Origin: Pocillopora damicornis
Taxonomy: Eukaryota
NCBI RefSeq assembly: GCF_003704095.1
Contig: NW_020845961.1
Span: 186,001-250,000, forward strand
Direction of reading: 5' to 3'
DNA length: 64,000 bases
The notes beneath the pieces are model-generated. The model was given only the letters and a program-made list of their open reading frames with translations, was not told the origin of the DNA and did no database searches. Shown piece by piece: positions 33,423-64,000 of the stretch. The translations under genes and the position numbers were made by a program. The first letter of the stretch is position 1, and each line of letters begins with the position of its first letter.

Positions 33423-36400
33423 TTACTTGCATAGAGCCTCCAGCTTCGCGAGTATCTTGTTTTTGGAGTGTTCACTGTTACTCCAGATTTTCACTATTTC
33501 CTCGATCTGGAAAGGAATCAGAGAAACGTTTGAGCGGTTCGTCCAATTGTCGCACAGATCGTTAATTTAAAAGGTGGGGCACTTCCTCCTGCTGTAGAAA
33601 AGAGTATTGGAAGAGAGGCGATCAAATGGTCTCGTTTTGAGTGAATGTTTGATAATTTTTTCAGTATTTTCTGAACGACTAAGAATCTAGCTTTAGGTAC
33701 ACGCTGTTCACGAGGAAAACAACGTTCCCTTTCACAGTGCAAACTTTTATTCACGATGTACATCACGACAATGTTCAGGGTTTACAACTTGTTTCTATAA
33801 AGGTTGTCGACTCCGAAAAGTATTGTGGGTAGTTTCCAGGCCATTTTTCTTTGACCTCAGGATCTCAGGGAAATCTGAGAAAACGTTAATGTAAGGACGA
33901 GGCATCGTGGGTTTAATAATGAAGAAATGTAAAATGGTTTCCGTGTTTACATAGCCTGATGTAAACACGCGGGAGGTTGGGAGAACACGAGATAAGGCTA
34001 TGTAAACACTTAGCCGGCTAGCAGCATAGCAGGCTATGTAAACACGGAAACCATTTTACATTTCTTTTATAAAATAACTAATGAAAGGGGAACGAAAACC
34101 GTGTTTACATACGCTCATGTAAAATGGTTTTATGGCCAATCAGAGTGCGCGTACTATTTGAATTATTTTATAAATTCATTTATTTATTTGACTGATTAAA
34201 ATTCGTTGATTACTGGACACCCAGATTACCATTCTAGATTTTTGCTGCTTGTCCTTTCGTCTTTCTACCGACAACCTTTCATGAAACAGCTGTATACGGT
34301 ATTAATTTTCGCATAAGGGTGTTTGATAGTGAACATCGGTAATGGCTGGTTATTGTTTATACTGTACCTCTTCAATTGTGTCCTGAAGCTCAGCACATCT
34401 GTCAGTCATCACGCGTAACAGCTGAGCAAACTGAACCATGTCATCAGGCAAGGTTACTGGATTGTGATGAGAAGCGCAACCAAAACCACATAGAACCGCG
34501 CGGAAGCTGGGAAACTGTTGTAAGAAGTAAAGCATAGCAGCCTAAAAATCTTGTGACTATCAAATAAAAGACGTACCAAGTGTTTTGCATAAAACAAAGC
34601 ACACTTTTTCGTGCTTCTTCCTTGGATAACCCACCAACTGTTTGCGTGCCCCTAACTCTTTCGCCTGCCTCAGAAAAACCTTTTCTTGTGTTTCACTTCC
34701 AGCCTTGGATAGGTGTGCCCTTCGAGGGGGTACCTCTAAGCATATATTTATTACACCGTAAACTTCTGGAATCTTGTATTTTATTACCCCTGCTATGGGA
34801 TGTACATCATGTCCTTAGTAAATTGGTTGATGGAATTTGGTGTCGCATTAAGCTAAAACATTGTATTTGATCAGAGAGAGAGTGTGAAGGGCAGTTCTTC
34901 CTATCTTAGTAATTATTATCTACTTGATGGATAATAAGTTTAAATTGTGTTGAGACTAAATATTTTTGTCCTTGTAAGGAGACTAAGGCTTGACTCAGCC
35001 TCTGAGCTAACCTTCATGTAAATATCCTACTGTGTCTACTGTTCTCACAATTCCCCAATTTTATACTTGATAATTTGGTGCTAAACTCGGCAAACAAATC
35101 CTATAGTTGATATGCTCCTTTCTTCAACAGAAATACCCCAAATACTGTCCTCCATTTAGAGCAAAAGTGTGAAAGCTAGCACATGGCGTCTCATGGTACC
35201 TTACGCGTCTCCTACGACAAAGATGCACAGAAGCAGCCTACTTTTAACAAGGATAGACAATTCTATTTCTTACCCTCCCCGTGTCTTTTTGTATTAAAAT
35301 GCTATCAATGTTGATGTTGTTGTGGCAAATACCACACTGGTGTATGAACCGTAAAGCTTGGAGGACATCAGTGGCTAGTCTACAAAGAAGTTTGGCCTCG
35401 AGTATGGCGGCGGATTCGTCCCTCATGAACGCGCCCAGTGTTATGTTTGATACAAACTGGAAGCAGATGAGCCTAATTACGAAAAAAAAAGAAAAGAAAA
35501 AACAACAAACGAAATCATTTCAGTACTCACTTGGAGGCCGTAGTTTGTTTTTGTTCTTTTTTATTAAATTAGCAAGGGGACTACCAATACAGAGAGTTCA
35601 CCTCTCATATATGGTTGGTTTGCGTCACCAATATATGACAGACCCGACGCTATGTAAAGAAGACCTTCAGAATAAGCACATGCACTTAAAAAAAAAATAA
35701 CAACTAGTCTGTTCCTTTCTGCAAAAATGAGTCCTCTTCATCACAGTTTTTATTCTCGTGTATAGAAGTTTAATCATCCATTCATCATCGATTAAGAGTC
35801 GTGAGTAGTCCGCCATTGCGTTCACTTGGCTTTGTAGTGATTGGCCAAGGAGTTTTACCCCATCTCTGATTCCCAACCAATCTGGTTCAAACATGATTTA
35901 CATGGCCATTCACGTTTTCCAGCGCTTTAGGTCGCCTATGTCGAGTTACTCTGACTTCTCTTCGACTCTCTCTGACTTTCCTCTTTGTTCTGAATGCACG
36001 GCATGAATACTTTGATTTTTGTATCGAACCCTTGATCGAAAAGCGCTCTATTGCAAATATCTCATACTCCTTTTCTTACTTCTAGTGATCATAATATTAA
36101 TTATCATGATTGTTAGAAATGATGAAATATTGCTAATGAGGGTGGAGGAACATGAAAGATCGAGTACAGTGTGCCGATAAGACAAAATATTTAAATACTC
36201 TTTCTCTGTATTTTGTCACTCGATTAATAAAATAAAAAGTAACTCACCAGGTTTGCGGTGGCAATGATGGTAGATCACCGTGACTCCTGGTCAGTCGACA
36301 ACCCTCGGCTAAAAATAGAGTGAATTATGTATAATTTGTAGGTCTGGTGGCTAAAAAAAAGGATTTATCACATGTTTAGCTGGATGGGGTCACACTCAGA

Positions 36401-37426: not shown

Positions 37427-40400
37427 CTGGAAAAGGAAAAAGACAAAACGCGGCACTCAAGTTTTTACAAGATAGTGTTTCAAAGATAGCACTGCATGAT
37501 GGGCCTCTTCTGCAAATCTTCCCTCTTGCAAAAACGGTGCAAGGGAAGGAGGGAAATAGTCTCGTACCCAGAATTTACACGGCCGTGCGTACATTCCAGT
37601 TCCACCGTAGGATCTGGGTACGAGATTAGGAGAGAAGGCAGAGACAAGAAAGAAGGAAAATCGGAAAAATAAATTGCCTTTGTGACCCTGATATGAAAGT
37701 TTTTTTTCTACCGTGTTTCGTCGAATAAGCGCTTACGCTCCAATAAGTGCCCTCCCCTTTAAGCTGCTATGTCAAACAAGCACCTTTCTCGATTAAGCGC
37801 CCCCCCTCCCCTCATCTCCCTCACTTTCTTAAATAGTAGGAAAACAAGGAAAACCTGTTTCTATTACCACTTCATTTTTATCTTTTAAGCTTCAACTGAC
37901 CTCTTTCATTAAGTACAGGAGAAAAGTTTCATTTCCATTGAGGAAATCATTTCCAATTATTTCAATCTCCATGCTCTTGCGGAGTTCCTTTATGTGCGTG
38001 GCCTGTTCATTTAATTTTCTTCTTACTGCTGCGCTAACTTTATTAGCGCCGTCCTCGATTAGGCGCCCTAGTTTTAATTAGCACCCCTCCTTTTAGCTGA
38101 AGTTTTAAATATTAAGCACTCGGGCGATTATTCGAGGAAACACTATATCTTTACTTCGACACATTACCTTGCTTGTTACGAATGGAAAACTTTGAGAAGA
38201 CAGACCCAAGTTTTTCTTTCACTTTTGAAGTGGCGAGAGTGTACAAGATTGGATTCACTGATGAGTTGAGAGGAAGAACGAAAACGGCCACCCAGACATA
38301 AACCATGCCTGTGAGATTAGAAAAGTAGGAAGCGTTTGTCAAAGACATGATACCCATAATGATAACCGGCATCCAGCATAAAAAATCTGTCAACACAATG
38401 ATGAAAAGACGAATGGCTCGTGCAGACTCTTGTTGCATGTGTGCAGATGCTGATCCGCCGACCAGTTTCATTATGGTCCAGTAGATGGCCATATATGCGA
38501 CGAGAATGAAGAAAAACGAACAAAAGTTGAAGATTATGAAGATCGCCATGAAATATTCCCAACCCGAGGGTTTCTCGCTGGAAAGCTGCAAAGGTAAGCA
38601 AACTGCTGACTGCGAGAAAAAGCTCATCCCGTTTGAATTGCCGAGGAAGTACTCTATGTCCAATATGGGTATTATGGACAAGACCACACCCACTACCCAG
38701 ACGCACAGACAAACCATATAGGCGGATTTAAGTGTCATTCTCTCAAATTTGAGAGCAAAAACCACGCATATTAGCCTGTCCGCGGTTGTTATAGTTAGCA
38801 TTGCCACGGAAACTTCACTGGAAAGCATAGAAATTGCTCCCACGATCCGGCAAGAAGGACTATTGCGCCATGAGACATCGTGAATGAAGTACTCCCCTTT
38901 CCACTTGGAGTCCAGTGCGGCAAGAGTCAGTAAGTAAACACCCATGAGAAAATCGGCCATTGCTAAATTGGAAAGGAGTAGCGACTGCACACGATTGTTG
39001 TCGGGCACCAATGCGCGCCAAATAAGGACAATCAAGTTACCGAAAGTGGCCAGGATGCCAAGCACCCAGAGGCACGCACGGATTAATGGGTATTTCATCA
39101 TGTCATCGCAGCTGGAGAATTCATTTTTGTCATTGCTTTGGCAGTCCAAGTTTTTGATGGCTTTCTTGGCATAGCAACACAGGATGAATTTGTCGATTTT
39201 CCTAGAGACAAGTTTAAACAGATAGTTGAATGAAAAATGAAAAAACTTTTACCTCTGCAAGGGACAATGGCCGTGTTCAAAAACAGAGTTTAATCAAAGG
39301 TGTAGCATAGATGTTGGGTTTAAAGACCATTAAGCCCCTTACACGGTGAGGGGGGGGNNNNNNNNNNGGAGGTATAAGCATTCATGGAAAAAAAAGACAT
39401 ATTTGACCATTCAAAACTTAAAAATAAACGCCTGAACGATTAAAATAATCGAGAAAAGTGTATTAGACTAAGGTGGTTTCTTGGGGTAACAGGCTAGTCC
39501 TATACCTAGATCTTCCACAGTTACAGTCAAACGGTGAGAATCTGGGTACGAGATTTAGTGTATGTTACCCGAAGATTGATAAAACCTCCTGAATGAAAAA
39601 AGTAACAACTTGTGAGTATATTTCCTCATATAGACCTAACTTCTACTGAGGCGCTTGCTCAGGGCTACCGGTTCAGTAAGATGGAGCTATTTTAAAAGGC
39701 CACTCACAGGATTTTCAAATTCTTTACTTTTTCGAATACATCTTGAGGGATCCTTTCGTCCAGCGGATTGTTTTGCAGATGCCTGATGATGTAAAAATGA
39801 GAATCGAGGAAGCTTATTAATAGTTTTCTTAGAGCAATTGTATTTAGTATTTCTGAGTAATTGCTTAGTTGTTCCTCTACTAAGCTACACTAATTCTGGC
39901 TTTATCGATTATAGAATCTATGCAGTGGCCAGAGAACCGATACTGCAAACGAACTATGCGTTACATCAAAGTGTGCGGGGTGCAAGAAGACCTAAAGTTT
40001 TGAAAAAAAAACTTACAGAATTTCAAGTTTGCGAAGTCCATCAAATGCGAGAGAGGTCAACGTTTTTAACTTGTTGTCATTCAAATACCTATGAAAAGGA
40101 TTGCGTCGGAGCTTTAGAAATAAAACTTCCTTCTTAAATGGGTTCTTTTTTTAATGAAAATATGTTTCAGTTAAGTGGTGATTTCTGTAAGAGCGGTCCA
40201 GGGTTTTTCGCATCGAAAGTTTTGCCTCAAACTTTACCCACTAAACTATCTTTGGTAGTAAGTAAATAAAACCTCATTGGTTTCCTGGAAATACATCAAA
40301 AATTTTTTCTGAGAGCTCTCAATAACCAAAGCTGCAAAAGGCCCTTTTTTGACCTCTTGCGACATCGAAAATTCCAAGAGTTGATATGCTAACCCCTCGA

Positions 40401-49400: not shown

Positions 49401-52400
49401 CCGTCAATGTAGATTTTTAAAACTCCGCTCATTTGTACTTCGCCCCAGCTGGCGCAAACATGGTGCCATTTGTCGTCAATTATGGAGGTTGATATATTCC
49501 TAAAAAGTGAGATAACGTGTTTCATTAAAAAAATCAGTGTGACGTCTGACTTCTGACGTTCGGAAACAAAATAGACCAAAGTATTGTGATTTAAAGTAAA
49601 CTTTCTAATGGAATCATAAAGTAGCCAGTTAAAACAAGCAAGGGGAGTGAAAGCTTCAGCTAGTTCTAGGGCTAGGATTTCCTAAGGTCGGAAGAGATAA
49701 CCAAGTCACCCCTTATAATCAATGCTCTTGAGCGCCGAAAGGCCTCGTCATTGCCACCTTCTCAGAGGTGCTCTTAGGCTGATGGCGGTTGGAAACCTCC
49801 ACCGTATGTCTCAAGTAATAGCTGATGATTGACGCGCATGAAGAATGATTGACGCGAATCGTCTGTTTGCGCGGGTGGGCATGCAGAGACTGTTACGGAA
49901 ACTAAACAAAGAAGTGTACTTTTTCCTGAAGAGGAGACAAAGAACATTGCTGAGCTCACGTCTTACAGTTTGCGACTCCTATACTCAATCCGCACACTCC
50001 AAGAGAATAGAAACTGTTTATATTCTCTTGGTACATACATATATCCCAACCAGTATTCATTCTTGGATTTTGAAAACTGAAGCACTGACTTGGGGATGGT
50101 AAATTGAAACAAACAACAATCTGTTCTACTCACCATTCTTTCTCATGTAATCCAATTTTCAGCAGAGCAGATTGAAAGACTAGTTGAAGTGAAGTCTTCC
50201 CTCGACACTCGCCAGTGTTTTGCCTATACTCGAGTTGCAGCTCCGGGAATTCGGTTCTAATCCACACACACAGTGTACCCTTGGTTAAATCCTTCTGGAG
50301 CCATTTCTTAACATGCATGCTTTGGCATATTGCATCAAAACGTAGCACTTTAACAGAGGAGGAAAACGAGAGGAGAAGAAAATTTTAACTGCTATCCACA
50401 ATGTGAAGTAAAGTAAAATTACCTCAGAATTTGCAAGGTTCTACCTAGTTATAGCGGCGTTTTTCTTGGTAAAAGGATGACTTTTATTCATATATCACTT
50501 CAGTCTTTGCTTAAATGTAGCGTGTAGTACATGTTTATGTTCATCGTAATTAAGTAAATAAATTTAAAAGAAATAAGCTCTTGAGTAGACGGACTATCAC
50601 CAATGAGCTGCACCAAAAAAATGGGATATACGCCCTAAACTTAAACAATGTCGTAAAAGAGTCTTCGCTGGGCTCATATAATGGGGGAGGGGGGGAGGGG
50701 TGGGGTGGAGGAGAAAGGGAAAAAATTAGAAAATACTAAAACGTTAAAGGCATTCTTTTCGAACACCTCTGCATTCCAGTTTCTAAACAGTTGTACGTAG
50801 AATTTTACTATATGTCAAGAACCATCGTTTTATGCTCTAGTCATCCCGACTCCTTTTTACGTGCGATGGTTTTTTTTTAAACGGTAACAAGTCAGAGATG
50901 GCGAGGAAGGCATGTAAGTAACGATATTGATTTGAGAACATATCTATGGGTGATCTACGTAAACGTAACCATTGAAGGGTTTGTAAGTAGGCGGGGACTT
51001 ATAATTAGCCTTAGTATCATAAGAAACAATTACCACTTTGTGAACTTTCAGTCACATTATCTTGTAAGTTTTCGAGAAGTTTTTTAACTTCAGAGGAAGA
51101 GACAAGTCTCCACGTAGCGTCACCAGGGGTACTGGTCCAGTTCTCAAGTTTTACACAATTTTTACAGCCTTTTGATGAATAAAAAGATAGATTAACCCTT
51201 AAACTTCCATGAGTGACCAAGACAGAATCTCTCCTTGCAATATCAATACGATATCAAGCAGACAAGTGATGAGAATAAAGAAAAACATTAATTGGGGAAT
51301 TATTAGTTGATCCAATACCAAATTCTCCAAACTAAAATCACAAGAACTATATGGCAGACAGTAAGGAGAATTACTAATGAGATCATGGGAGTTAAAGGGT
51401 TAATGAAGTTAAAACAAATACTGAAAAGAAGACAAATCAGTGAAAAACTTTTCAAAAAACAGTTCCTACTCTGTTTGTCGGTGAATGGTATTTTCTCGCA
51501 TTTTTCCGGCGAAAATGAGACATCATCAATTGCAAACATCACTTTTCCGCTGGAGCTTACTGTTCCCCTGAAGGAAATCTTAAGTAAAAAAAAAAAAAAA
51601 CACCTTAAATTATTATCTGATTCACAGTGCATACGTTCAGCAAAGTTCATTAGACAGACACCTACTGGTTTAGTACTACTTGAAACGACGTAGTTTACCA
51701 CAAACCGTCCAAATATGAATGCGAAGGTTGTATCATTCTTTTGGAACTCTCTTTGAGTGATAGCTGTTGCTGATAGCAAATCTTTGATTTCAGGCACTTT
51801 TTAAGTCTTCTCCTTACCCTCTACCTTTGGCAAACGCAAGGGCCTACCACTCAGTACGCTGGATTTTGGATTGGAAGGTCTTTAAGCTTTGGCCGAGGCA
51901 TCATTGTTGTACTGTGTCCATGGACAAGACACTTCACTCTTACGGTGTGTGCCTTTCTGCAGCCAGTGACAGCGACAGAGACAGGTGCAGAGACAAAGAC
52001 GATGACCGTAACAGTGACAGAGACGATGGCAATGACAGTGACAATAACAGTGACAGTTAAAATAAGATTGACAGTTGACAATGACAGTCCAGAAATAGTG
52101 ACAATAACAGTGACATTGACAGTGATTGCGACAGGGTCAATGATAGTGACAGCAACAAAAGAGTGACTGCAAATGGTAATCACATGATCATTTCACAGAA
52201 ATGATACTGACCTTGGCCCTTACATCTCTGTATTTATCCAATGTGAGAGGAAGCTGTACAAAAATCCAGTGGTCACTTGTGTTATCCGGGACCGAGAGAA
52301 GTTCTTCCGACGTCTCATTTTTATTTGGGTTCAAATGCACAACCAAGACCTCTATTTTATAAGATAAAGAAGAGGTCTTTCTGCAGTTGCAAATGTAATA

Positions 52401-55400
52401 CCAAAAGCGCATACACTTCCAGTTGTTTGAGGGCCCAGTAACGTTTGTAGAAATTGTTGCTGGAAAATCGTTTTTACCTCCGATGAAACAAACGAAGTTT
52501 CCTGTTAGGAAACAAAATGTATCAAGATTCAGCTTAGACTTAATCCCTTTTTTCTACTGCTTCCCGAACTTAAGCTAAAAAATAAGAAAAGCTCTTACAC
52601 AAACCTGAATGAGTAGAAAGTTTTCTAATAAAATGGTCTTCTTCGGCAAGCGCCCAAACCTTAAACAGCGCGTCGAAATATGTGCTTTGTTTTTAGTGCA
52701 ATCTTGAAAGCATTAGAAAACTTTTAAAAGTCCTTACTTCCACCTTAAGACAGCAAGCCTACTCATCTTAAAGAATCTATGCAATGTTCATGCCACAGAG
52801 TTTTACATATGGCAGAATTAGTATTTTGAACCTATCTTGTTCGCAGATGCTAGGAGATTGAGTATGTCACGAACAACCCATAAAAGTTGCATTCAGGTCA
52901 CAAATTTCACGTTAGCTGAAATCTGTAATGCAAAATTTGAATAATTTTGCTCGCATTTGGCATCACGAGCGAGTTTAACTGGAGAAGACGAAAGCCTTAT
53001 TATATGCCAAATCACAGATGCATAACATGGATGGTCTGTAAGTGAAGCTAAAGGTGTCCTCGATTGCATTTGTCTAGAAAAAATGAAGGTAGTCACCCTC
53101 GTTTCCATGCGTTTTAGAGTTTTGAGTCCTCATTGTTGCCTTGTGCCAAACAACTTTATCCTTAGTTACTGGTCGTTGTGATGACTTTGGGTTTTAGCCA
53201 ATTAATCGAAAACTGTAAAATGCGTAACATAAAATTGGTACTAAACCATCTTATCGTCATATTTTTAATCAATGTCAGTGAAAATTATTGTGAATTTTCA
53301 CATATCTTACCAGGATTTTTTGCTCGAAATCTATCATGACTACAAATCTTTTTTGAGGAGTTCCAGCTTAGTCGCCATTCTTCATCTCCTTTCCAACCAC
53401 ATTTCGTTCTCTCAAAATAGCACCCCGGGTTTTCTGAAAAAAAAATTTTAAAAAAAAACTATATTTGTGAGGAAAACATACTGAAAATGCTGAATCCTAA
53501 GAAAAGAGCATCACAGCCTAGGTCCTGTGTGCGGGAGACATATACTACTGACCCTTGAATCATGAGTCCCCTGGACTAACCTGTGGGGGTTGGGGGAGGG
53601 GGAAGGGAAGGACGGGGGAATCAGGGGACCGCCACCTTCACTTTTTCTTCCCAGAAGTATGAACAATTTGTAAGGGAGGTGTATTCCTGTAAGCCTTCAA
53701 ATCTGTAATCACCGTACGGAAATTCATACTTTGTGATTGGATTGTTTTACGTTACGCGGTCGCTTCTGTCTTGATTCTTAATATCTGTGGTTGACAAATT
53801 TGCCGCTTCTGCTTTCATGTTCAAATTACCATTTAAGGACATTTTACTCACTTTCCGAATGATTCCGTGTTTCATAAGACTGCTTTTCTACTGCTGGAAG
53901 GGAATTTCAACTTAATTAGTATGGTGGTAGGGGGTCAATTGGGAGCGGTAATGTAACATTCATAAAGTGGTCTTACGTGTCCTTAAAGGATCTGCGTCAT
54001 AGTATTCTGAGTAGGTTCTTTGTTACGTGAGAAACAACTTTGAACAGGAAGAAGGTCACATACTTCTAGCTCGGTAAAATAGGAAAAAAATAGGTGGCAA
54101 TGATAAACCTGAAGATGTCATTTAACCTTTCAACCCTTAACTTAACCCTGTCATAAACATCAAGTCGTTACGCTGCTTTAATATTTCACGTGAGTATTAC
54201 AGTGTTGCAGACTGTATGGGAATCCATAATCTTTGATAGAAATAGTGAGAGCCCTTTATACTTAAGATTCAGTAGCAATCGGGTCGGACGCAAATCCTTG
54301 TTTCTATCTCTATTGTTTTGAAAGATCTTATCAGTCACGATTTCAGGGTTATTGGTGGAAATTTGACAGTTGTTAGTGTAGTCGATTGCACTGCTGTATG
54401 AAATAAAGGATAGCTGCATACCAGTGGTAACTGACAGTGTAGATCGTAGTAATGAAAAACGAGGGGACAAAATTTGATTCATTACCTTGTTGTGGCTTAA
54501 GAGTCTGATTCCCGCAGCTCAAGTTGTTGAGTGGGCACCTGGAAGACTCTGTGGAGGATTGTTTAAGAATAACGATTCTTCAGCGTCGGTACAAGTTACT
54601 AGTGTTGATTGTCTAAGTAAACCAGTTTGCTGTTGCATGCATGACCTAGGACTCGCAAGTCCATTACCCTAGCCATTCGGACATTCGGTGGTTAAATTAA
54701 AAGCAAGTCACAAACAAATATCCGAAGCGTGGAAACCGTTTTGAAAATTTGGTATGCTACAGAACGTTTGATAAAATCGAGCTCCACTTTTAACAAAAAG
54801 TTAATTGCCTTTTACCATGGAAAAGCGAAAAGATTTGATAACTTAACATACAGATAAAAAGGTTCTCAGAGGGCAAATATTCTGGACAGCGGGGAACATT
54901 TAGAACCCCCAAAAAACTATATTGTGATGCAAATATGATGCAAATATGACAGTATGGGAAGAGGGCGAAGATACTCGAAATCTTACTCACCGCAAATTGA
55001 TGGCTTGTGAGTTTTATCCTGACAACCATTGGAGTCCTGACAAGTTTCTGACCACGGAATGAAACTTCCGTCCACACACTGGAATTTTTTGTTCTCGCTT
55101 GAATCTGTGTAATCAAGAGTACGTATTAGTACATAGTTGGTTGGGAAACTGCTATCGTCCTGAAGAGATTTACGAGCCTGTTTAATTTCTAAGTTTTTAT
55201 AATTGCCCAAAGACATCTTATTACAAGTTCAGTCTGGGAAATAAATATTGCTATTATATCAAATTAGTTGATGACAAATATTTTCATCAGGAAGATTCTC
55301 CGTAATTGATAGATTCTTTGGCTACGGAAAACATGTCGAAACACCGCTATTTCTTGAGAAAGTTGGGAAGTTTGAAACTTGCTTTGGCTCCGTGACAAAT

Positions 55401-58400
55401 GTTTGAAGCGACTAGGAAAATGGAATCCAAAAAGGAGCATCAATGGTTACGGATGAAGAAGAAGGGGAACAAACCAATGTGAGTTAAAATCAAAAAGAAG
55501 TGCAACGACAGTAGCAGGTTTTAGGGTAGAAATGGGACACGACAGCTGACCAGCGTACAGTTGAAGTCATATGAATAACTTGGTGATGCAGGGGCACGGA
55601 AAAGAGACCAAAGGATACCAAAAAGGATGATTTGGGAATTTTGACTCAAGTCTTAAACGTCATCCACAAACACAGGGGGTTAATCACGATACACACCTTT
55701 GTAATTTTTGCTACTTCATTTCAAAATTATGTGCACTTACTGCAATGCTTTAACTCATCACTACCATCTGAACAGTCTTCGGTTCCATCACAGAGTTTCT
55801 CAGCGTCAAAACATTTATTACAAAACTTGACTTGTCGTAATTTATCGTTACAGAGCGTCCCTCCTAAAACAAGTATAGCGAGGTGGAATGTTATCTTGGA
55901 GGCAAACGAACTAAAAGATGTTAAAAGTTGTTTTTGTTTTTACAGATTGCATGAATAGTGATGCCAAAGGGACAAAACTTCACTTGGTCCTAATAAAATA
56001 TGATGTATACTCCGCTGCAACATTTCAACTGCAACACCGCTAGCGATGAGTTCTATTAGCGAGAGCGCGTCGCTTCAAGAAGCATGTTGTTTATATTGGT
56101 TAGCTGCTAATGGTGCGTTTCAGCCCGCTGTCCTTGAAGCAGACCGATCTTCATTATCTGTTGTAACGGATTCTTTTTATGAGACAATTCATCATTTCTT
56201 TATCTATCAACTACAGCCTACAACTAACGTACCTTTCACAGCAGAATGTATTTAAAGTGAAATTAATTTTCCACCTAGCTTCACTCGTTTTTCCATCCCC
56301 CTCTGTACCCCATTCACCGAAACATAAAAGTGTAGAAAAAAGCTAACAGGTAACCTGGGATTAATGCCTGCAAATATTCAGGATTTTAATTGAGTCAATG
56401 ATTGTCCTGTTCTCTGTACATTACCCACCTAATGTTGCATTCATAGGTTGTAGCTCGCACTCCAATGTTTTTATTATTACATCATATATCGTCATCCGTC
56501 CCCTTGTACCTGTCTTGCCTTCAAACTGAATCTATAAATTAAAAAAAATGTTTGAAATGAACCGCAAGATCTAAGTTGTAAAGTAGCCTTATAATTATTT
56601 ACTCACACGATGCTTTCGACCAAGCTGATCATAGCAATATGGAGGACGCTTGTTCGACACAAACTGAGTGATGGCTTCGTTTTCAAATAGAGTTATCTGT
56701 GACTTGGTGGTACAGCGCCGGAGCGCAGATCCTGACGGTCTGAGGTTCGATTTCGCGTTGGGATTCTGCTTTTTGGGCTGAGCTTGTAACAAAATGAAGT
56801 AACATCTTTCTTTACATTCAATTTGTCAGGCACGGCCGATCTTTTCATCTGCATTTCTCAGAGTGTGGTCGGACTTATCATAAGTAAATCTTTTACAGGT
56901 GATCAAACATACTGAGCCCTCAAGTCCATAACCTCTAAGAGAGACTATTATCTAATTTTTTCTCACGGTATCGCTGTTTAATCAGACATTGAGGTCATGA
57001 AAATAAAGCGAATGTTCCTTAAACAAACCTAGTGATTGTTCAACAAATTCTCTTTATCAGGTTTCATGAATATGTATTTAAACAGATCATAAAGACTTCT
57101 GCGTTATCCACGTATTGGGGAATGAAAAGATTTTAACGCCCTAAACTGAATTTGTTAAATGAATCAATTCTCAAGTATTGAAGAGCCTATGATATTCAGC
57201 GAAAAATGAATTCTTTTTACCGTGATGTTTTGCTCAGATTTCCAAGAAACTTGAGCGAATGTCGACTTGTTTCCTTGCTCATCTTTTATCGACCACTTTG
57301 GAAATTTCTTCCCATTTGGTTGTACCACAGATACTTTTAAATAAAAAAAGGAGCTGTTGCTTGATGAAGTATTGTATTTGAATTGGAGACATGTTGGTAC
57401 TTTGGAATACGCTTCTTTCCATGGTAATAAAGTGCTTTGCAGCCAAATTTCTTTTCCACCGATACTGAACACTGTTAAAAAAAACAATTGTTAAAAATTA
57501 TTCCTTGGTAAAGTTTTCTTTAAAGTTAAGTTTCGTCATACAAAACTTTGCTTTGATTCAACCTCTAATGGAGCTTTGCAGACGCATCTGCCAACAACTG
57601 TCCTTTCTCAAAGTTATCTGCAAATAACTTAAGAGAAAATGAAATAGCTTCACCAGAATTTTTTTTATTTTTTCCCTCATTTCTAATAATCATCTTTTCA
57701 AAAAAGCGTCGGCGTTTTTTCAATAACAAATTTTGCCTTCTTTACAACTCTCTACTCGATTTCAATCATTTTGACCGAAAGGAATTGAAATCTGATGATG
57801 AAATACCTCCCCCGTTCCATTTGTTCCCTGTAATTGCACTTGTGTTCCACTTGCAAAAGTTACTGGGTGAGGTGCAGTTTTGCAACACGGCAGCTATAGG
57901 ACAGGGGAAATATGACAAAGATAACGAACAAGAGATGAAAAATCAGTCAGTACAGTAACATACGTATGGTTACCTAATATTATCCATAACTTAGTTAGTT
58001 AGAGTGATGAAGTGGTCCTCTGTATCATAGGCTATGCAAAACTTTTCAAATCGGATCAAGGGCCCCTTTCAACCGACACACCTCACACTAACACGGGAAT
58101 GCACTCACCATTCTCTGTAAAAGCCGAAGTTCTCGTACAAAAAAACTTACTTATCTGGTAGATTTATTAGAGGAAAGCATTCAGTTTAATTTTGCGCCAT
58201 TTTCTACTTCATTTTGTCTTTCCCTTTCCCACTTCACTTTTCATGTTTTTTCATTTCCTCTTTTAAAATAACTTGGTACAGAAGTGCTTTTAATTGCGGA
58301 TAGCTAACCCTGCAGCGAAGACGGTGAGGAGGACTTTTTCACGAGATTGACAATATAAATCATCTCATACCTTGAACAGTAATATTTGCCAGAGATTTGT

Positions 58401-61400
58401 GCATGGGTGACAGTTTTCTGCCGTGCTCTACCAGAGAGTAGTTGGCCTGTCAATCCGGATGAACAAATAAGAGTTAAATTCAACTAATGCATAGAGCATC
58501 AAGCTGCCACCAGCGCGGTGACATATCCGTTTTCTTTCCCCCACCCTACCCCCCTCTCTCTTTCTCCCCTTCTCCCCCCCCCCCTTCTCTCTCTCTGCCT
58601 CGCTCTTTCTCCATGAATCAAATTCTATCCACAGTTACTAATTTCAAAGTTCATTATTTGAGAGTGATACTATTGCTTACTAGAACATCGTAGACTCCGG
58701 GATTAACAGCCACTTCCGTCTCAACTTGGAATGATATTTCTTTGCACGTCATCGACAATGAAGAATTTAAGGGAAAGGTTTTATTAAGCAAATGCAAACC
58801 GAGATCCAGCTTACAACTCGGACAGAAAACTCCTCGGCAACAGTATTTGTAAGAACCTTAGGTATAAAAACAATGGAAATACAAGTTATTAAATTGCATT
58901 GATTAGCTTTATAAAGGTTTCTAACTCACAAGAATAAGGCTATTATTTGACGAACACCCTGAGAATGTATGGTTAAAAATAAACTTGCAGACTTAAAGAA
59001 AATCATCACGGCCACCGTAACAAGAAAAGAAAAAACTAAAAAATTCCGAAAAGAGAACAACAGCTTTTTACACGTGTATTTTGAGAAAACTTTGTATATT
59101 TCCTAGCCGCTCTTTATAAAACAGTTGAGTGAAAGTAACAATTAGGTCTCAGTTACCTGGAAACGGTAACCCAAACAGAAAATTAATCCAGCTTTTATTT
59201 GGAACTCACCCTGCTTTCGTGTGCCATAATGAATTGGAGGTCTAGCCCCGTTAGAGAGAGTAATGTCACGGAGTCTTTCGTGAAAGTCCGCATAAAATGT
59301 TAATTCATTTTTTCGATCGAAGATGTCCTTGACGTTACCGTTGTGACTGCTTTATGTCACTGTTCATGAGAGCAGCAGCGGCAACGACGAAGATCGAGAT
59401 GACGACGACACTAACAATAACATCAGCGAAAACAATCATGATAACGATAGCAGTTACGGTGACGGTGACTGTGACGGTGCCGATTAAGATAACGGTAACG
59501 GTAACGGTAACGGTAACGATAACGGTCACGGTAGTAATGATCGTGACGGTGACGGTGACGGTGACGAGTAAGAAAACGTTGACGGGGACGGGGACGTAGC
59601 GACAACGATAATGATGAAGATTATTACAATTACAATAACGATAATGGTAACGGAAATTATAACGATTAAGCTTGCAATAATAACAACTAACTAACCAGCG
59701 ACGCTGAGGCTAGAACCAACTTCTATAGTGGCGTTCTCACTTGGATCGCTTAGCTGTATTTCTAAAGTAGTTTCTCCTGAGAAAGTTCAAAGAAAAATTG
59801 ATTAGAGTCTTGTTAGGCTAAGAGCACTCATAATTGTCGAGATGATTTGCTGAAGTAGACTGAAATCATAAATTCAAGAGTTACGAATTTCAAAAAAGAG
59901 TTAAAAATGTAAATTTAAGGTTTATACCTGGTTTTAACCAGTACAAGTTGTTGCCAGACATCGGTTTTTGTTCTGTTCCGTTGGGAAACTTCACTCCGAC
60001 AGCCAAATGATCATGACGGGAAAAATTGTTGGTCATGAAAACTTCCATTCTGTAAAAATAGCACTCAGAGAGAGACCTGACACCAGAACTTTGATCGATT
60101 GGCCGGCTATTAGGAAGTAATGAAAAATGAAAACTTAAATCAGTCCCCCTTCCTCTAAAATTAATATTCAATTGATTCTTTAAAGTAATCCAGGATTTAA
60201 ATGTTTTTTTCGCCTTTCTTAACCTTTGTTCACTCAGTGATTATTCAAGAAAGTTGAATTACTTTCTGATCAGCCATTAAAATTCTCAAACCAGTGACAG
60301 CTTGGTTAGTTGTGTTTTTCTGCTCCTCGATTTTAATGTCTTTACTCTGAATTATCTTTAGCTCCACTTGTTTTTGTGATAGTCTGCTGTGATAACATTA
60401 CTTTTACTTTTACGATGCTTAATCCGAGAGCCTTTTATGTTCAAACTAGGCAGTAGCCAAACTGCAAACTATTTTTGATGTCAAGCAGCCGTATTCAGAA
60501 ATGATCTCAACAGATTTATCGAATTCGGCCTGGGGAAGTTAACAGAAAGGAAATTTCTCGATAAAGGGTGTGGCGATGTTTTTATTTATTTATCAATTTT
60601 TGTTATGTTTGGTCATTTCTATGAAATCAGGCAGAAAAAGTAAGGACCGAAACTTCTTCACATTTTGCAGTCTCGAATTGGTTTGTTTTCATCACTTCTG
60701 ATCACAAAGTAAGGTGTTGAAACTATGGACCCTAGGTGTTACGTAATTTTGAGGAAGTTGCCTGTTTCACCTGTGCCAGTCTTGAGTTGGCTCGTTTAAC
60801 TGCACCAGAATATTTTTGTCTAAATCTGCGCTCGGGTCTAAGTCGTTCACTGTTACAAGCCATAGCTCACATCTTTCAGCGCAAGTCATATAAAAAGTAA
60901 AGTTTCCACTTCGATTTATCTGTTAAGAAATTGAAATAATAAACCTTACGTAAAAGTGATGTCTAGCCTGACGAGTGTAAATAAATTTCGTTGTAGGTGA
61001 CATATTTATTGAATACCTTCACTAAACGACTGAATTACTACCTGAATTACCAGATGACTGACCTACTGACTAACTGAACTATTGAATGATTTAGTAATTG
61101 ATACACTGACTGACACACGAACAGGTAAACTGACCGATTCGCTGACCGACTCACTGTCCGACAAACTACTCACGACTGACTCAACAACTATCGCTGACTG
61201 AATCACTGACAGCTTGACCAATTCATCAAATGACTCAGGGACTGACTTTTTCTCCGACTGACTGAATGATTGAATCACTATTTCACTTATTAAATGACTC
61301 ACCGACTCACTCACCGAATGTCTGTCTGACTGAATGACTGATGACTGACTGACTGCTGACTCAGTAACAGACTGTAAACAAATGATTGAGCGATTAAGTG

Positions 61401-63868
61401 CTTTCTAGTGGTGAATGGCCCATTCGTGTGCCTCTCCTTTTGCTTTTGCTCAACTGATGGTTACCTGCAAATATGTGGTTAATTTCTGTCCGTAGCCAAA
61501 ACCAAACTCGGACGGTGCGTTAAGACTTTTAATGACATGCCATCCGCTCACATTCTCTTCGTCTATTTCATTTAAGTCGTAGATATCCAGATTGCTGATA
61601 TTCCAAAACTCTCTCATTACTCCATTTCCATCAGATTTGGAGCCTGTGAAGCGAAACGAAAATCGTTCACACTGAATAATTACTTTATCAATTTTTAACT
61701 AACAGTTACTCTCCGAAATGGAGATGAGTACTTGTTTTAGTATATACCACACAGAAAGCTAACATACTGCAAACAGTGGTCGGAAATTAAAATCTTGACG
61801 AGCGATTTTGTCCCTTCAACTGCTCGTGGGTGAATATGGTACTCGCTAATCTCTTCTGACCTAGCCGGTCAGCGCGCGCAAAAGCACGCAAAAAGCACTA
61901 TTTACAAGTTTGGTATATAATTATCTATTTTAATCTATTGGGACGACTGAACATCTGTTTCAAAGGCTTCTCGCGATTCATACGAGATTGTTTTTAGGCT
62001 TACCTATTCCAGAAATGTGTAATTCGCGAGCAGTAAGTTTAGAGCTCCCCTTTTTGCGAACTTGGACGGCCACGCCCTTCACAGGGGGAACACAATCAAA
62101 CACTAATCCTGCACGTTTTTCATTTCTGTGACAACACACTGTCCGATCATGTGTCAAAACTTGAACCTGGTACAGTTCGCTACTCGTATGAAAATGACTC
62201 TCGTTGACCTTTACTTTGTAAATATGCAGATCCCCAAGTAGGGGAATGTTTATCCAAGGATTGAACTCCTACAATTGTAATAAAGATCATTTTTAATAAA
62301 TCTTAGCGGAAATATCGATATTGCTGTGTCAAGGATCATTAGGTGATAGATCACAGAAAAATAACTGGTACACCCAATTGCTCCACATCTTGCCACGAAA
62401 TCGTCAGTTGAACAATTGAAGAAATATCGGCGAAAGTCTAGAGGAAAATAGCTTTCTAACCCATTTGGTTGTATTTTATAGATCTGAAATTTGGTCATCG
62501 GCTTTCCGCTATCCAGCAAACAGCGTAGGTGTAGGTGTTGTGTATATGATAGCACACCTAATTACTCAAAATCGGAAGCGTCATAACTTAACGAACTGAA
62601 ATGGTGTCTTCCAATTTTTAATGCTGAGGGTCGAATGGTATAATTATGATAATAAGAGTTCATACGTACCTCATTGGAAGAGAANNNNNNNNNNNNNNNN
62701 NNNNNNNNNNNNNNNNNNNNNNNNNNNNNNNNNNNNNNNNNNNNNNNNNNNNNNNNNNNNNNNNNNNNNNNNNNNNNNNNNNNNNNNNNNNNNNNNNNNN
62801 NNNNNNNNNNNNNNNNNNNNNNNNNNNNNNNNNNNNNNNNNNNNNNNNNNNNNNNNNNNNNNNNNNNNNNNNNNNNNNNNNNNNNNNNNNNNNNNNNNNN
62901 NNNNNNNNNNNNNNNNNCATAAGAATATTACAGAGCTTTATAGGGGGGAACACTTACTTTATATCAATACACACCACTGCATACCAACGTCATAAGAGCT
63001 GCGAATTTTCTTTTGACTCAAATAAGGAGACTTAGTAAGTAATTTGAGGAAAAAATAAGGAAGACTAAAATTGACTTCGGAAAAATAGGTAACAAAAACA
63101 TGAAGTGACAAGTATTTAACTCAGAGACATGAAATAAATGAAGACTAATTTAGTTCTTAAAACAGAGAAGTTTGCCATTAAAACGAGTCGTGGTCTCTGA
63201 AAGTAGCCATTTAACATCGTTTGTCGAAAGTTCCACTCATCACGTCCGTAACATAGGATAAGTTATGACGTATAAGTATTCAATACCTTTTACCCATACC
63301 CCCATTCGTCCATCGCCATCACCGATCAATCAATCAAATAACTATCGTTTTACTCGGTCACAGTCTGCTGGTACTCACTAATTCTTACATTGGAAACAGC
63401 AAGTAAGAGTTTAATGAATTACACTTAAATCGTTTTAAAATATTACTAAAATCGACTTACCATCTTGGTTTTGACATATAACACCAACAGGATCATACCC
63501 GTCGCATGGTAGGTTACTAATCGCAGCTTCATCTCCATCAAGATGCACGCATGTTTTCGTCTGATTCAGTTTGGGATAACCTGATTTCCACAGATTAGGA
63601 TCAATACGCGATCCATCCATCCACGTCCAAGAATCCAGATCTGTCGAAACTCGATCCAAGTAAAACTCTCTTTTTTCAAGGTCCAGAGTAAGATTTCCCA
63701 GTAGATCGGATAATCTGTGGTGTTGTGCACTGGTATTAACCGTAGCTAAGCGATAACCGCCTCTTGAGCAGTTCTTTGAGGCGTCCGTCCAATTGGAACG
63801 AGCTCTATGGTAAATCTTGTAACAGTGGCCATCGATGTGGGAAAAACCCGCTGCGCAAGAGCTCTTAG
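33423..63868 (-). CDS. Giant GRL101/type-C LGR-like GPCR with a multi-domain ectodomain and a C-terminal pseudokinase domain; at least 41 exons, 5' end outside the window
   Basis: A continuous chain of minus-strand GT-AG exons with matching phases runs from the C-type lectin exon (63461-63868) through the PA14, MAM, LDLa, pentraxin, CUB, LRR and 7TM exons to a terminal exon with TAA at 33423-33425. One exon is cut by the N gap at 62685-62917. Confidence 0.82.
33922..34066. repeat. Near-perfect inverted repeat (about 37-bp arms) within a dispersed repeat element
   Basis: AAGAAATGTAAAATGGTTTCCGTGTTTACATAGCCTG ... CAGGCTATGTAAACACGGAAACCATTTTACATTTCTT. Confidence 0.8.
37709..38145. mobile_element. 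TIR-bounded non-autonomous DNA element (TA-flanked) immediately after the 7TM exon
   Basis: TACCGTGTTTCGTCGAATAAGCGC ... GGGCGATTATTCGAGGAAACACTA, with internal repeated TAAGCGCC motifs. Confidence 0.65.
38168..39201 (-). CDS. Hinge plus seven-transmembrane exon of the LGR/GRL101-like receptor
   Basis: Type-C LGR hinge LCCYA...C...EFSSCDDMM. TM motifs GNLIV, LSNLAMADFLMGVYL, C..VGAISMLSSEVS...TADRL, VCLPL, TDFLCWMPV and LPLNSSVNPILY. Acceptor at 39202-39203, donor at 38166-38167. Confidence 0.95.
39708..44493 (-). CDS. LRRNT plus 8 leucine-rich-repeat exons of the GPCR ectodomain: 44470-44493 micro-exon, 44225-44336 LRRNT, then 43252-43341, 42533-42604, 42207-42278, 41647-41718, 41230-41301, 40703-40774, 40017-40088, 39708-39782
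   Basis: Mostly 72-nt phase-2 exons, each encoding one LxxNxI/L..F..L..L..L repeat (e.g. DLSYNKIVYVEDRVFQDMSSLLEL, YLNDNKLKTLTSLAFDGLRKLEIL). The cap is CPENCNC...C..LTEFP. Confidence 0.92.
43640..43802. mobile_element. Short MITE with CAG...CTG-type termini (hAT-like)
   Basis: CAGCGGCAGATCCAG ... CTAGATCCGCTATTG. Confidence 0.55.
44874..45212 (-). CDS. CUB domain exon of the GPCR ectodomain
   Basis: GWILSPQYPGYY.N...TWTLIAPPGHVIKLEF..FDLE.S..C..DFVEV...GRFCG...F.SN....GGGFKANY. Symmetric phase-1 exon. Confidence 0.92.
46244..57893 (-). CDS. Three MAM domains (57807-57893/57221-57471/56429-56531; 53311-53433/52224-52501/51470-51578; 51034-51168/47079-47344/46244-46352) and two LDLa-like exons (55741-55863, 54991-55104)
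   Basis: MAM motifs: CYFERTKCGW, CMRFWYY, CLQFKY, CIKFRF, WQYGQV, FAIDDVSFSPEKC. LDLa motifs: CDGTEDCSDGSDELKHC and the degenerate FQCVDGSFIPWSETCQDSNGC. Confidence 0.85.
47935..50347 (-). CDS. Pentraxin/LamG-like domain exons (50134-50347, 49351-49499, 47935-48183)
   Basis: Motifs TLCVWIRT, DDKWHHVCASW...G.LKIYIDG and GYISGLNVWNHVL..QEI..M..C...GN..W. Phases are consistent. Confidence 0.85.
48225..48720. mobile_element. Dispersed repeat ending in a ~140-bp imperfect palindrome centred on CCGCTTCGCGG
   Basis: AGGACCGAGTGGAGTC...ATCGGACTCCCGCTTCGCGGTCGTCCGAAT...GACTCCACTTGGTCCT. Confidence 0.55.
51192..51403. mobile_element. TTAA-flanked MITE copy
   Basis: TTAACCCTTAAACTTCCATGAG ... CATGGGAGTTAAAGGGTTAA. 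Confidence 0.85.
51960..52170. repeat. Degenerate (GTGACA)n hexamer repeat, intronic
   Basis: Direct inspection; it generates spurious T/V-rich ORFs. Confidence 0.85.
56695..56810 (+). mobile_element. tRNA-like SINE head (not a functional tRNA)
   Basis: A-box-like TGACTTGGTGGTACAGCG and B-box GAGGTTCGATTTC; no proper acceptor stem. Confidence 0.5.
59345..59690. repeat. Degenerate (GTAACG/GTGACG)n hexamer repeat, intronic
   Basis: Direct inspection. Confidence 0.85.
59928..61643 (-). CDS. PA14-like domain exons (61465-61643, 60771-60919, 59928-60106)
   Basis: GVMREFWN.I...FGYGQKLTTYLQ..SGNFTFYMTC..RCELWL...YFYRMEV...DHLAVGVKFPNG.E.KP matches the animal PA14 pattern. Confidence 0.75.
61015..61400. 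repeat. Degenerate (CTGA)n tetramer repeat, intronic
   Basis: Direct inspection. Confidence 0.85.
62685..62917. other. Assembly gap (N run) that truncates one exon of the GPCR gene; a second 10-N gap lies at 39358-39367
   Basis: On the minus strand, TTC TCT TCC AAT GAG|GTACGT emerges from the gap with a phase-0 donor that matches the next exon (62004-62208). Confidence 0.9.
63461..63868 (-). CDS. C-type lectin-like domain exon of the GPCR ectodomain
   Basis: CAAGF...GHCYK...NWTDA..NC...LATV...WTWMDGS...W..GYP...CV.L...PC...VICQ. Symmetric phase-1 exon. Confidence 0.88.
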
Positions 63869-64000
63869 CTATTAGATTTCAAAAGATAATGGATATGTGA
63901 TACATAAAAAGTTGCAAAGAGGATGGCCTAAAATTAAAACCCCTTCCTTATAAAGGAGCTGATTCGAAAAATCAAAACCAGAAAAGTCTGCGGCTTATAC

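What the first reader, a model, noticed from the sequence alone, without database searches (positions are those of the whole stretch)
33423..39201. GPCR-pseudokinase fusion: an LGR/GRL101-type 7TM receptor whose cytoplasmic tail is a protein-kinase fold
Seen in sequence: the 7TM exon has a donor (CAAG|GTAATG at 38168) just before its apparent stop. Six downstream exons splice onto it in frame with every phase matching (1,0,1,2,0,0). They add about 270 aa: GRAHPSLEMAS...KI-GYVVCREED..LFLVKWFSQDKLQEWEREVSIY..NHPCVLPYLW..-WLICFQFVSNITLGAFM..LCRLATDVLQALRFIHQCGICHNNINIDSILIQKD..-FRAVLCGFGCA..DDMVQFAQLLRVM..-IEEIVKIW..CK*. Kinase subdomains II-IX are in correct order, and the first tail exon starts at a splice acceptor with no separate first exon. 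Established knowledge: characterised animal LGRs (RXFP1/2, GRL101, LGR4-6, glycoprotein hormone receptors) have no enzyme-fold domain in the tail; GPCR-enzyme fusions are best known from oomycetes and Dictyostelium. Inference: this is a hybrid receptor coupling a rhodopsin-class 7TM to a built-in kinase-fold scaffold. The ORF track splits it into unrelated fragments, so it is easy to miss. I cannot tell whether homologues are already annotated.
Basis: partly seen in the sequence, partly recalled or inferred. Interest (0 to 1): 0.9.

Follow-up and report, generated by a model that had tools for sequence, protein, structure and literature searches.

The report
Coral LGR receptor with dead-kinase tail
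A coral hormone-receptor-type GPCR (relaxin/GRL101 class) really is spliced to six further exons that give it a built-in, catalytically dead protein-kinase domain, an arrangement kept in corals and sea anemones that I found described in no paper.

Summary
RNA-seq contigs from four runs (three studies) carry the GT..AG junctions, including 38168->37426. One 5.7 kb contig holds the 7TM exon and all six tail exons.

- **Receptor type.** The 7TM is closest to relaxin receptor RXFP1 (E 3.5e-52). CUB, MAM, LamG/pentraxin and LRRNT exons lie upstream.
- **Tail.** It is a trimmed kinase fold. Exon E hits Pfam Pkinase weakly. A family HMM built without the window picks exons E, C and F as the three best of 2871 window ORF pieces. 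An AlphaFold model of a homologous transcript matches SYK, BMPR1B, TGFBR1 and JAK3 at Z about 22.
- **Catalysis.** The beta3 Lys and alphaC Glu are kept. HRD is HNN, DFG is GFG, and APE and the Gly-loop are lost. This is a pseudokinase.
- **Spread.** At least seven paralogues in this genome share the layout, as do Stylophora, Acropora and Porites models and a full Nematostella model; more distant LGRs lack the tail.
- **Prior record.** Public models are named GRL101-like, but I found no paper on this. The scan has noted paralogues of this gene before in this genome.

The window copy is the most divergent member. The docking or switch mechanism is inferred.

The parts
38168..39201 (-). Single exon encoding the hinge end and the whole rhodopsin-class 7TM domain with helix 8 (DRL, CWMP and NPILY motifs). 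The donor CAAG|GT lies 17 nt before the in-frame stop.
   Evidence: 7tm_1 1.7e-29; RXFP1 3.5e-52; contigs cover 38167-39201
37427..38167 (-). Intron 1 of the tail (GT..AG). It holds a dispersed repeat at about 37516-37907.
   Evidence: joint 37425/38167 in 4 runs; depth table
37272..37426 (-). Tail exon B: linker (GRAHPSLEMAS...SSDKI) with no family match.
36608..36782 (-). Tail exon C: kinase N-lobe, with the degenerate Gly-loop GYVVC, beta3 Lys in LFLVKWF, alphaC Glu in EWEREV, and HPCVLPYLWH.
   Evidence: (family HMM 7.6e-11, hmm 49-112)
36248..36308 (-). Tail exon D: 61-nt mini-exon encoding the beta4-beta5 loop.
   Evidence: 62-nt piece in the contigs between exons C and E
35274..35472 (-). 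Tail exon E: hinge, alphaD, alphaE and the catalytic loop, with HNNINIDS in place of HRDLKxxN.
   Evidence: Pkinase 8.4e-5; 7.6e-15
34368..34514 (-). Tail exon F: GFG in place of DFG, a short loop in place of the activation segment, and alphaF (DDMVQFAQLLRVM).
   Evidence: (E 0.055, hmm 200-254)
33423..33506 (-). Tail exon G: last helices and the stop codon. It is diverged and lacks the family's WDTxL end.
   Evidence: (joint 33506/34368)
44224..63893 (-). Upstream ectodomain exons of what is most likely the same gene: LRRNT 44224-44364, CUB 44869-45195, MAM 47061-47384, LamG/pentraxin 49334-49579, MAM 57167-57487, LDLa-like 54989-55816, and C-type-lectin-like to 63893.
   Evidence: Pfam; collinear tblastn with Nematostella P0065; X6 contig has 1781 nt upstream of the 7TM exon

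Best explanation
One expressed gene of a scleractinian coral encodes three parts in series. The first is a very large lectin-like, LRR-bearing ectodomain. The second is an RXFP/GRL101-type rhodopsin-class 7TM domain with intact R3.50, CWxP and NPxxY. The third, after a linker of about 60 aa, is a shortened TK/TKL-like protein-kinase fold of about 215 aa.

The kinase fold keeps the beta3 Lys and alphaC Glu. It has lost the catalytic Asp (HNN), the metal-binding Asp (GFG), the Gly-rich loop and the APE/activation segment. It is therefore a pseudokinase.

Shown here: the splicing, the fold at family level, the loss of catalytic residues, and conservation of the architecture in at least 7 paralogues and across Scleractinia and Actiniaria.

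Inferred: the tail does not phosphorylate. It acts as a conformation-sensitive docking or allosteric module next to the G-protein and arrestin site. It may bind nucleotide, and it may recruit an active kinase or adaptors. In most family members, though not this copy, a C-terminal S/T-x-hydrophobic end could recruit PDZ proteins. The receptor would then add a kinase-scaffold output to, or gate, ordinary G-protein coupling.
For: - **Splice model and RNA junctions:**
- **7TM identity:**
- **Kinase likeness of the window exons:** (exon E Pkinase 8.4e-5). In one search, an HMM of ten non-window family tails ranks exons E (7.6e-15), C (7.6e-11) and F (0.055) first among 2871 window ORF pieces, collinear with the model.
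- **Fold:** AF2 model of P0153 with tail pLDDT 80-96. All top Foldseek hits are kinases at probability 1.0. VIA-align gives Z 22.6 to 21.9 over residues 148-414. The PDB profile search puts JAK1/2/3 and TYK2 on top at 5e-10 to 1e-8.
- **Motifs:**
- **Conserved architecture in this genome:** the 7 closest 7TM paralogues each have tail exons 1-5 kb downstream on the same strand, with the same exon limits. Four LGR paralogues at 39-42% identity have none.
- **Other species:** Nematostella XP_048584250.1 has 7tm_1 plus PK_Tyr_Ser-Thr. Stylophora, Porites and Acropora models and a Logan transcript ORF, P0153, run from TM5-7 into the tail. An ENA contig shows MAM-CUB-7tm_1-tail.
- **Tree:** the 7TM tree splits tail-bearers from three tail-less LGRs at 100/100.
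Against: - The window's own tail was never folded or searched as one protein, because the exons were not joined. Its fold is inferred from homology.
- This copy is the most divergent member. Exon F is marginal, exon G is undetected by the family HMM, and the conserved C-terminal motif is absent.
- Variants seen in RNA contigs give 9 non-synonymous to 5 synonymous in the tail. That is too few to show constraint.
- Logan contigs show presence, not abundance or full-length molecules.
- Low-depth unspliced contigs exist at intron 1.
- Loss of canonical residues does not prove lack of activity; WNK, CASK and HER3 are precedents (my own knowledge).
- No partner, ligand or coupling data exist.
Confidence: 0.8

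Rival explanations
1. There are two genes: a tail-less LGR ending at the 38151 stop, and a separate kinase-like gene downstream with its own start. The joined contigs would then be read-through or assembly artefacts.
For: Low-depth contigs run unspliced across the donor (X1 record 6, 37819-38196) and across the exon B acceptor (X1 record 5, 37399-37783). Exon B contains in-frame ATGs. Old tail-only gene models exist: Nematostella EDO39792.1 and Exaiptasia XP_020909115.1.
Against: A precise GT..AG joint 38168->37426 appears in all 4 runs at 3-6 times the depth of the unspliced pieces. Single contigs hold the 7TM exon plus all tail exons. Phase is kept across six junctions. The same order is found in at least 7 paralogues. 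Fused models or transcripts exist in six other species.
Confidence: 0.03
2. The tail is an active, atypical kinase, making this a true receptor kinase with a 7TM.
For: The beta3 Lys and alphaC Glu are conserved in every member. The fold is complete enough for Z 22 against active kinases. Some kinases that lack canonical residues are still active (my own knowledge).
Against: The catalytic Asp is Asn in every paralogue aligned, and in Nematostella P0119 and the coral homologues. The DFG Asp is Gly in all the coral copies and in Nematostella, and is kept only in the Exaiptasia sequence (VDFS). The Gly-rich loop is reduced to one Gly. There is no APE or activation loop, and the catalytic-loop Lys and Asn are lost in the window copy.
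Confidence: 0.1
3. The family's tail is functional, but this particular copy carries a decaying remnant. The window gene would then work as an ordinary LGR.
For: This copy has the weakest match to the family HMM of all copies: 51.7, 38.7 and 7.2 bits, with exon G not found, against 70-107 bits for the best-matching exon (the counterpart of exon E) in most other copies. It has lost the WDTxL/DSFV end. Both its 7TM and tail sit on long branches. The variant ratio is 9 N to 5 S.
Against: All six exons remain open with canonical sites and correct phases. K, E, HNN and GFG are retained. The spliced form is the main RNA form in three studies.
Confidence: 0.12

Closest known systems
RXFP1/RXFP2 and GRL101 (type C leucine-rich-repeat GPCRs)
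   Same: The 7TM is most similar to RXFP1. There is an LRR-bearing ectodomain with LDLa-like modules. Homologues are auto-named GRL101 or relaxin receptor 2-like.
   Different: Characterised type C LGRs have a short unstructured tail (my own knowledge). Roch and Sherwood (PMC4079206) did not analyse cnidarian LGR tails. Here the tail is a 273-aa kinase-fold module, and the ectodomain adds CUB, MAM, LamG/pentraxin and C-type lectin domains.
GPCR-TKL/K of acanthoecid choanoflagellates, GPCR-TK of choanoflagellates and sponges, and GPCR-kinase 'bigrams' of oomycetes and amoebozoans (PMC12716839)
   Same: The topology is the same: a 7TM followed by a C-terminal TK/TKL-like kinase domain. None has been functionally characterised.
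   Different: Those 7TMs are not LGR or rhodopsin-type relatives of this one, so an independent fusion is likely. Homology to them was not tested here. [quoted passage not shown] The present domain is catalytically dead.
Regulatory pseudokinase domains: JAK JH2, KSR1, and the kinase-homology domain of receptor guanylyl cyclases
   Same: A dead kinase fold is used as an allosteric or scaffold module. The catalytic loop HNNITTxN resembles JAK1 JH2 (VHGNVCTKN). JAK1, TYK2 and KSR1 are the best sequence matches in the PDB.
   Different: There is no FERM/SH2, no partner JH1 and no cyclase. The score margins over ULK2 and EGFR are only about 2 bits, and the structural ties include SYK, BMPR1B, TGFBR1 and TNNI3K. 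No family assignment is justified.

Membership tests
Rhodopsin-class GPCR, LGR type C (RXFP/GRL101) | 7tm_1 domain with R3.50, CWxP and NPxxY | tested here: met
   Pfam 7tm_1 at 1.7e-29. ADRL, CWMP and NPILY are read in the translation.
Rhodopsin-class GPCR, LGR type C (RXFP/GRL101) | 7TM closer to RXFP1/2 than to other GPCRs | tested here: met
   RXFP1 3.5e-52; TSHR and LHCGR about 1e-38; LGR4 about 1e-12.
Rhodopsin-class GPCR, LGR type C (RXFP/GRL101) | LRR ectodomain with LDLa modules upstream in the same gene | tested here: inconclusive
   LRRNT at 0.0015, below the cut-off. LDLa-like tblastn hits lie at 54989-55816. Homologue P0065 has LRR_8 and three Ldl_recept_a domains. Linkage of the far upstream exons to this transcript is shown for only 1781 nt.
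Eukaryotic protein-kinase fold | Profile match to Pkinase / PK_Tyr_Ser-Thr | tested here: inconclusive
   Window exon E gives 22.5 bits, below the 31.7 cut-off. Homologues give 28.7-45.2 bits on PF07714, above its 23.1 cut-off. The joined window tail was not searched.
Eukaryotic protein-kinase fold | Bilobal kinase structure | tested here: met
   This holds for family member P0153, not for the window protein itself: pLDDT 80-96, Z 22.6, rmsd 2.3 A, 216 aligned residues to SYK. The window is linked to the family by HMM.
Catalytically active protein kinase | HRD catalytic Asp | tested here: not met
   HNN in the window and all 10 paralogues.
Catalytically active protein kinase | DFG Mg-binding Asp | tested here: not met
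   GFG in the window; GF(G/S), GLS or NFG in most paralogues and homologues. The Asp is kept as a D-F motif only in Exaiptasia P0092 (DFS) and in the ENA locus L022 (DFG).
Catalytically active protein kinase | GxGxxG loop and APE/activation segment | tested here: not met
   GYVVC / SVGFVV has only one Gly. No APE is present; a short variable loop lies between GFG and alphaF.
Catalytically active protein kinase | beta3 Lys and alphaC Glu | tested here: met
   LFLVKWF and EWEREV in the window. Both are conserved in all copies.
Choanoflagellate/sponge GPCR-TK or GPCR-TKL/K | 7TM and kinase domains homologous to those families | not tested
   None of their sequences were at hand. Only the architecture is shared (PMC12716839).

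The most novel reading that the evidence does not exclude
Anthozoan LGR-pseudokinase receptors may be a distinct eumetazoan receptor class. In this reading, a lectin/LRR pattern-sensing ectodomain drives two outputs from one polypeptide: G-protein coupling and a kinase-scaffold pathway. The scaffold would use a JAK-JH2-like or TKL-like dead kinase, plus a PDZ-binding end in most members. This is an animal counterpart of plant LRR receptor pseudokinases, expanded in corals for microbe, symbiont or self recognition. I could not test that. If it is true, the fusion would predate Bilateria.
Probability: 0.25. Interest if true: 0.85.

Novelty: new variant of a known kind. Interest (0 to 1): 0.7.

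Why it matters
GPCR-kinase fusions were thought to be confined to protists, choanoflagellates and sponges (PMC12716839), and none has been studied functionally. Reviews of cnidarian LGRs skipped the tails (PMC4079206).

Here a rhodopsin-class hormone-receptor-type GPCR of eumetazoans carries a conserved kinase-fold domain directly behind helix 8. A full orthologous gene exists in the tractable sea anemone Nematostella (LOC5517652).

That makes one question directly testable: can a 7TM conformational change be read out by a covalently attached pseudokinase, and is that output G-protein-independent?

It also matters for coral biology. This family is expanded to about 8-10 copies in this genome. 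Its ectodomains look glycan- or microbe-binding, and automated names (GRL101-like, uncharacterized) hide the domain.

Tried and rejected
- **Joined tail not searched.** All searches of the window were exon by exon, and the fold was taken from database homologues.
- **Exons with no Pfam match.** Exons B, C, F and G alone gave nothing. Exon D is too short for the tool.
- **Representative search.** It was dominated by multi-kinase proteins whose generic domain scores add up. Only P0065 among the top 150 combined a 7TM cluster with the tail.
- **Breadth beyond Anthozoa.** Three word-indexed searches found only scleractinians and Nematostella. This is limited by length windows and shared words, so absence elsewhere is not shown.
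- **ESM Atlas.** It gave only generic kinase clusters.
- **Kinase group assignment.** JAK versus TKL could not be resolved.
- **Variant counts.** There were too few for dN/dS.
- **Literature.** Searches for cnidarian or coral GPCR-kinase or LGR-pseudokinase found nothing. One query was malformed.
- **Complex prediction.** It was not used, because no specific binding pair is claimed.
Full report
**Observation.**
On the minus strand, the 7TM exon runs from the acceptor at 39201 to 38168. It ends CAAG|GTAATG, 17 nt before the in-frame stop at 38151.

Six further exons follow: 37426-37272, 36782-36608, 36308-36248, 35472-35274, 34514-34368 and 33506-33423. All have AG/GT boundaries, and the phases are 1,0,1,2,0,0. 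The frame stays open to TAA at 33425-33423, and the tail is 273 aa.

**RNA evidence.**
I laid Logan contigs of four poly-A or total RNA runs from three studies on 33400-39250.

- All four runs show joints 37425/38167, 36781/37271, 36308/36608, 34514/35274 and 33506/34368. The skipped ends are CT..AC, which is GT..AG on the gene strand.
- The remaining joint is implied by a 62-nt piece between exons C and E in the same contigs.
- X6 record 16 (5687 nt) contains the 7TM exon, all tail exons, 1781 nt upstream and about 2 kb beyond 33400.
- X2 record 13 (3701 nt) and X16 record 9 carry the 7TM exon plus exons B to F.
- Unspliced pieces across the donor and the first acceptor exist only at depth about 10, against 30-63 for the spliced form.

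Contigs cannot give abundance or prove full-length molecules. The junction that fuses the receptor to the tail is nevertheless directly seen. Exon E has only one high-identity copy in the 234 Mb assembly, so a retrocopy is not the source.

**The receptor part.**
The exon matches Pfam 7tm_1 at 1.7e-29. Among solved structures it is closest to relaxin receptor RXFP1 (3.5e-52), then TSHR and LHCGR (about 1e-38), and far less to LGR4.

R3.50 (ADRL), CWMP and NPILY are present.

Upstream on the same strand lie LRRNT-like, CUB (8e-23), MAM, LamG/pentraxin and further MAM exons. These are collinear with the 3282-aa Nematostella protein P0065 out to 63.9 kb.

**The tail is a kinase fold.**
All window searches were exon by exon.

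- Exon E alone hits Pkinase at 8.4e-5, profile positions 75-134, below the Pfam cut-off.
- An HMM built from ten family tails from other species, with no window rows, was run against all 2871 stop-to-stop pieces of the window. It ranks exon E (7.6e-15, hmm 131-194), exon C (7.6e-11, hmm 49-112) and exon F (0.055, hmm 200-254) as the top three, in collinear order. Exon G is not detected.
- Homologues pass the PF07714 cut-off at 28.7-45.2 bits.

An AlphaFold2 model was made of P0153. This is a 417-aa ORF from an RNA assembly that runs from TM5-7 into the tail, and it is the orthologue of the C2971 paralogue.

- Its pLDDT is 80-96 over residues 150-413.
- The top 500 Foldseek matches were all at E <= 0.001, and every match listed is a protein kinase at probability 1.0.
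- VIA-align gives Z 22.6 (SYK), 22.5 (BMPR1B), 22.4 (TGFBR1, TNNI3K) and 22.3 (JAK3). Rmsd is 2.3-2.9 A over 216-235 residues, spanning model residues 148-414.
- A sequence profile of the tail finds JAK1/2/3 and TYK2 best in the PDB (5e-10 to 1e-8), but ULK2 and EGFR are only about 2 bits behind.

The domain is TK/TKL-like without a sharper assignment.

**It is a pseudokinase.**
Across the window, ten paralogous exons and the homologues, the motifs are as follows:

| Element | State |
|---|---|
| beta3 Lys (LVKWF / LLKYF / LIKHF) | kept |
| alphaC Glu (W.RE) | kept |
| HRDLKxxN | HNNI(T/N)xxx |
| DFG | GF(G/S) |
| Gly-rich loop | one Gly |
| APE / activation segment | absent, replaced by a short variable loop |

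Retention of Lys and Glu leaves nucleotide binding possible. That is inference.

**A conserved family, not an accident.**

- The seven closest 7TM paralogues in this genome (49-57% identity, on contigs C4228, C4130, C3362 and C2971) each have tail exons 1-5 kb downstream on the same strand. The exon boundaries are the same.
- Four LGR paralogues at 39-42% identity have no tail exon within about 8 kb.
- In a 7TM tree, tail-bearers separate from three tail-less LGRs at 100/100. One long-branch tail-less gene (C1619) falls inside the group with uncertain placement.

Outside this genome:

- Nematostella XP_048584250.1: Lectin_C, F5/8C, MAM x5, LDLa, LamG, fn2, Pentaxin, CUB, LRR, 7tm_1 and PK_Tyr_Ser-Thr.
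- Stylophora PFX21360.1, named 'GRL101'.
- Porites lutea 'relaxin receptor 2-like', and Acropora digitifera and A. millepora 'GRL101-like', with both 7tm_1 and kinase Pfam hits on record.
- Exaiptasia tail fragments.
- An ENA contig with MAM-CUB-7tm_1-tail.

Tail identity of 47-63% between robust and complex corals, and about 30-38% to Nematostella, shows long-term purifying selection on the family.

**This copy.**
The window gene and its sister (C4130) sit on long branches. Its tail scores lowest against the family HMM.

It ends ...KLEALCK instead of the family's WDTxL or DSFV end, which looks like a class I PDZ ligand. Variants in the RNA contigs are 9 non-synonymous to 5 synonymous in the tail and 4 to 3 in the 7TM, too few to judge.

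The copy is intact, spliced and expressed. Relaxed constraint on its C-lobe cannot be excluded.

**Mechanism.**
Shown: a single polypeptide places a dead kinase fold about 60 residues behind helix 8 of a coupling-competent LGR.

Inferred: the domain works as a docking or allosteric module, as JAK JH2, KSR or the guanylyl-cyclase kinase-homology domain do. It could recruit an active kinase or adaptors, or gate G-protein and arrestin access.

The lectin-rich ectodomain suggests glycan or microbe sensing. I give the scaffold reading about 0.6 of the weight within the accepted fusion, and an active atypical kinase about 0.1.

**What is known.**
PMC12716839 reviews GPCR-kinase fusions. [quoted passage not shown] It states that none has been characterised.

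PMC4079206 catalogued cnidarian LGRs but did not consider the tail. The other literature searches found nothing.

Fused gene models are public, and UniRef calls two tail fragments 'Protein kinase domain-containing protein'. The sequences are therefore known, but the receptor class is not described.

This scan has already noted the same architecture on paralogous DNA of this genome (s1-765081 and s1-765117). That work had no RNA evidence, which is supplied here. Its claim of acorn-worm homologues could not be tested.

**Verdict.**
This is a new variant of a known kind: a GPCR-kinase fusion, here an LGR with a pseudokinase, in eumetazoans. Interest 0.7.

Noticed in passing
window 33900-34180 (last intron of the tail): A MITE-like element of about 260-300 bp with 37-nt perfect inverted arms. 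It has more than 100 copies at 78-99% identity across the genome and very high summed RNA-contig depth (thousands).
   Followed up: partly
window 37516-37907 (intron between the 7TM exon and exon B): RNA-contig depth is 4-5 times that of the flanking exons, with many partial joints. This is probably another dispersed repeat that is transcribed elsewhere.
   Followed up: no
L016 = G000:C4228:234000-243999: Two complete sets of tail exons lie in tandem behind one 7TM exon (hmm 49-296 twice, 730 bp apart). This could be a tandem pseudokinase or alternative tails.
   Followed up: no
L020/L027 = G000:C4228:346000-364999: A complete tail exon set has no LGR 7TM exon within about 11 kb upstream (300 N in that stretch). 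It may be an orphan tail gene or an assembly gap.
   Followed up: partly
Last exons of the paralogues (L013, L019, L020, L022; L016, L017) and P0065, P0119, P0153: Most family members end in WDT-x-L or DSFV, an S/T-x-hydrophobic end like a class I PDZ ligand, conserved from Nematostella to corals. The window copy ends ALCK and L014 ends WDT.
   Followed up: partly
L023 = G000:C1619:454500-464499: An LGR 7TM with no tail exons within 8.5 kb sits on a very long branch inside the tail-bearing clade. This may be a secondary loss of the tail or a misplacement.
   Followed up: no
P0152 (Exaiptasia KXJ09395.1, 'Tolloid-like protein 2'): This gene model joins a CUB-containing N-terminus directly to the pseudokinase tail without a 7TM. 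It is probably a mis-joined model of a family member.
   Followed up: no
window 44224-63893, minus strand: The ectodomain exons (LRRNT, CUB, MAM x2, LamG/pentraxin, LDLa-like, C-type-lectin-like) are collinear with the 3282-aa Nematostella protein. The gene may run off the window's end.
   Followed up: partly
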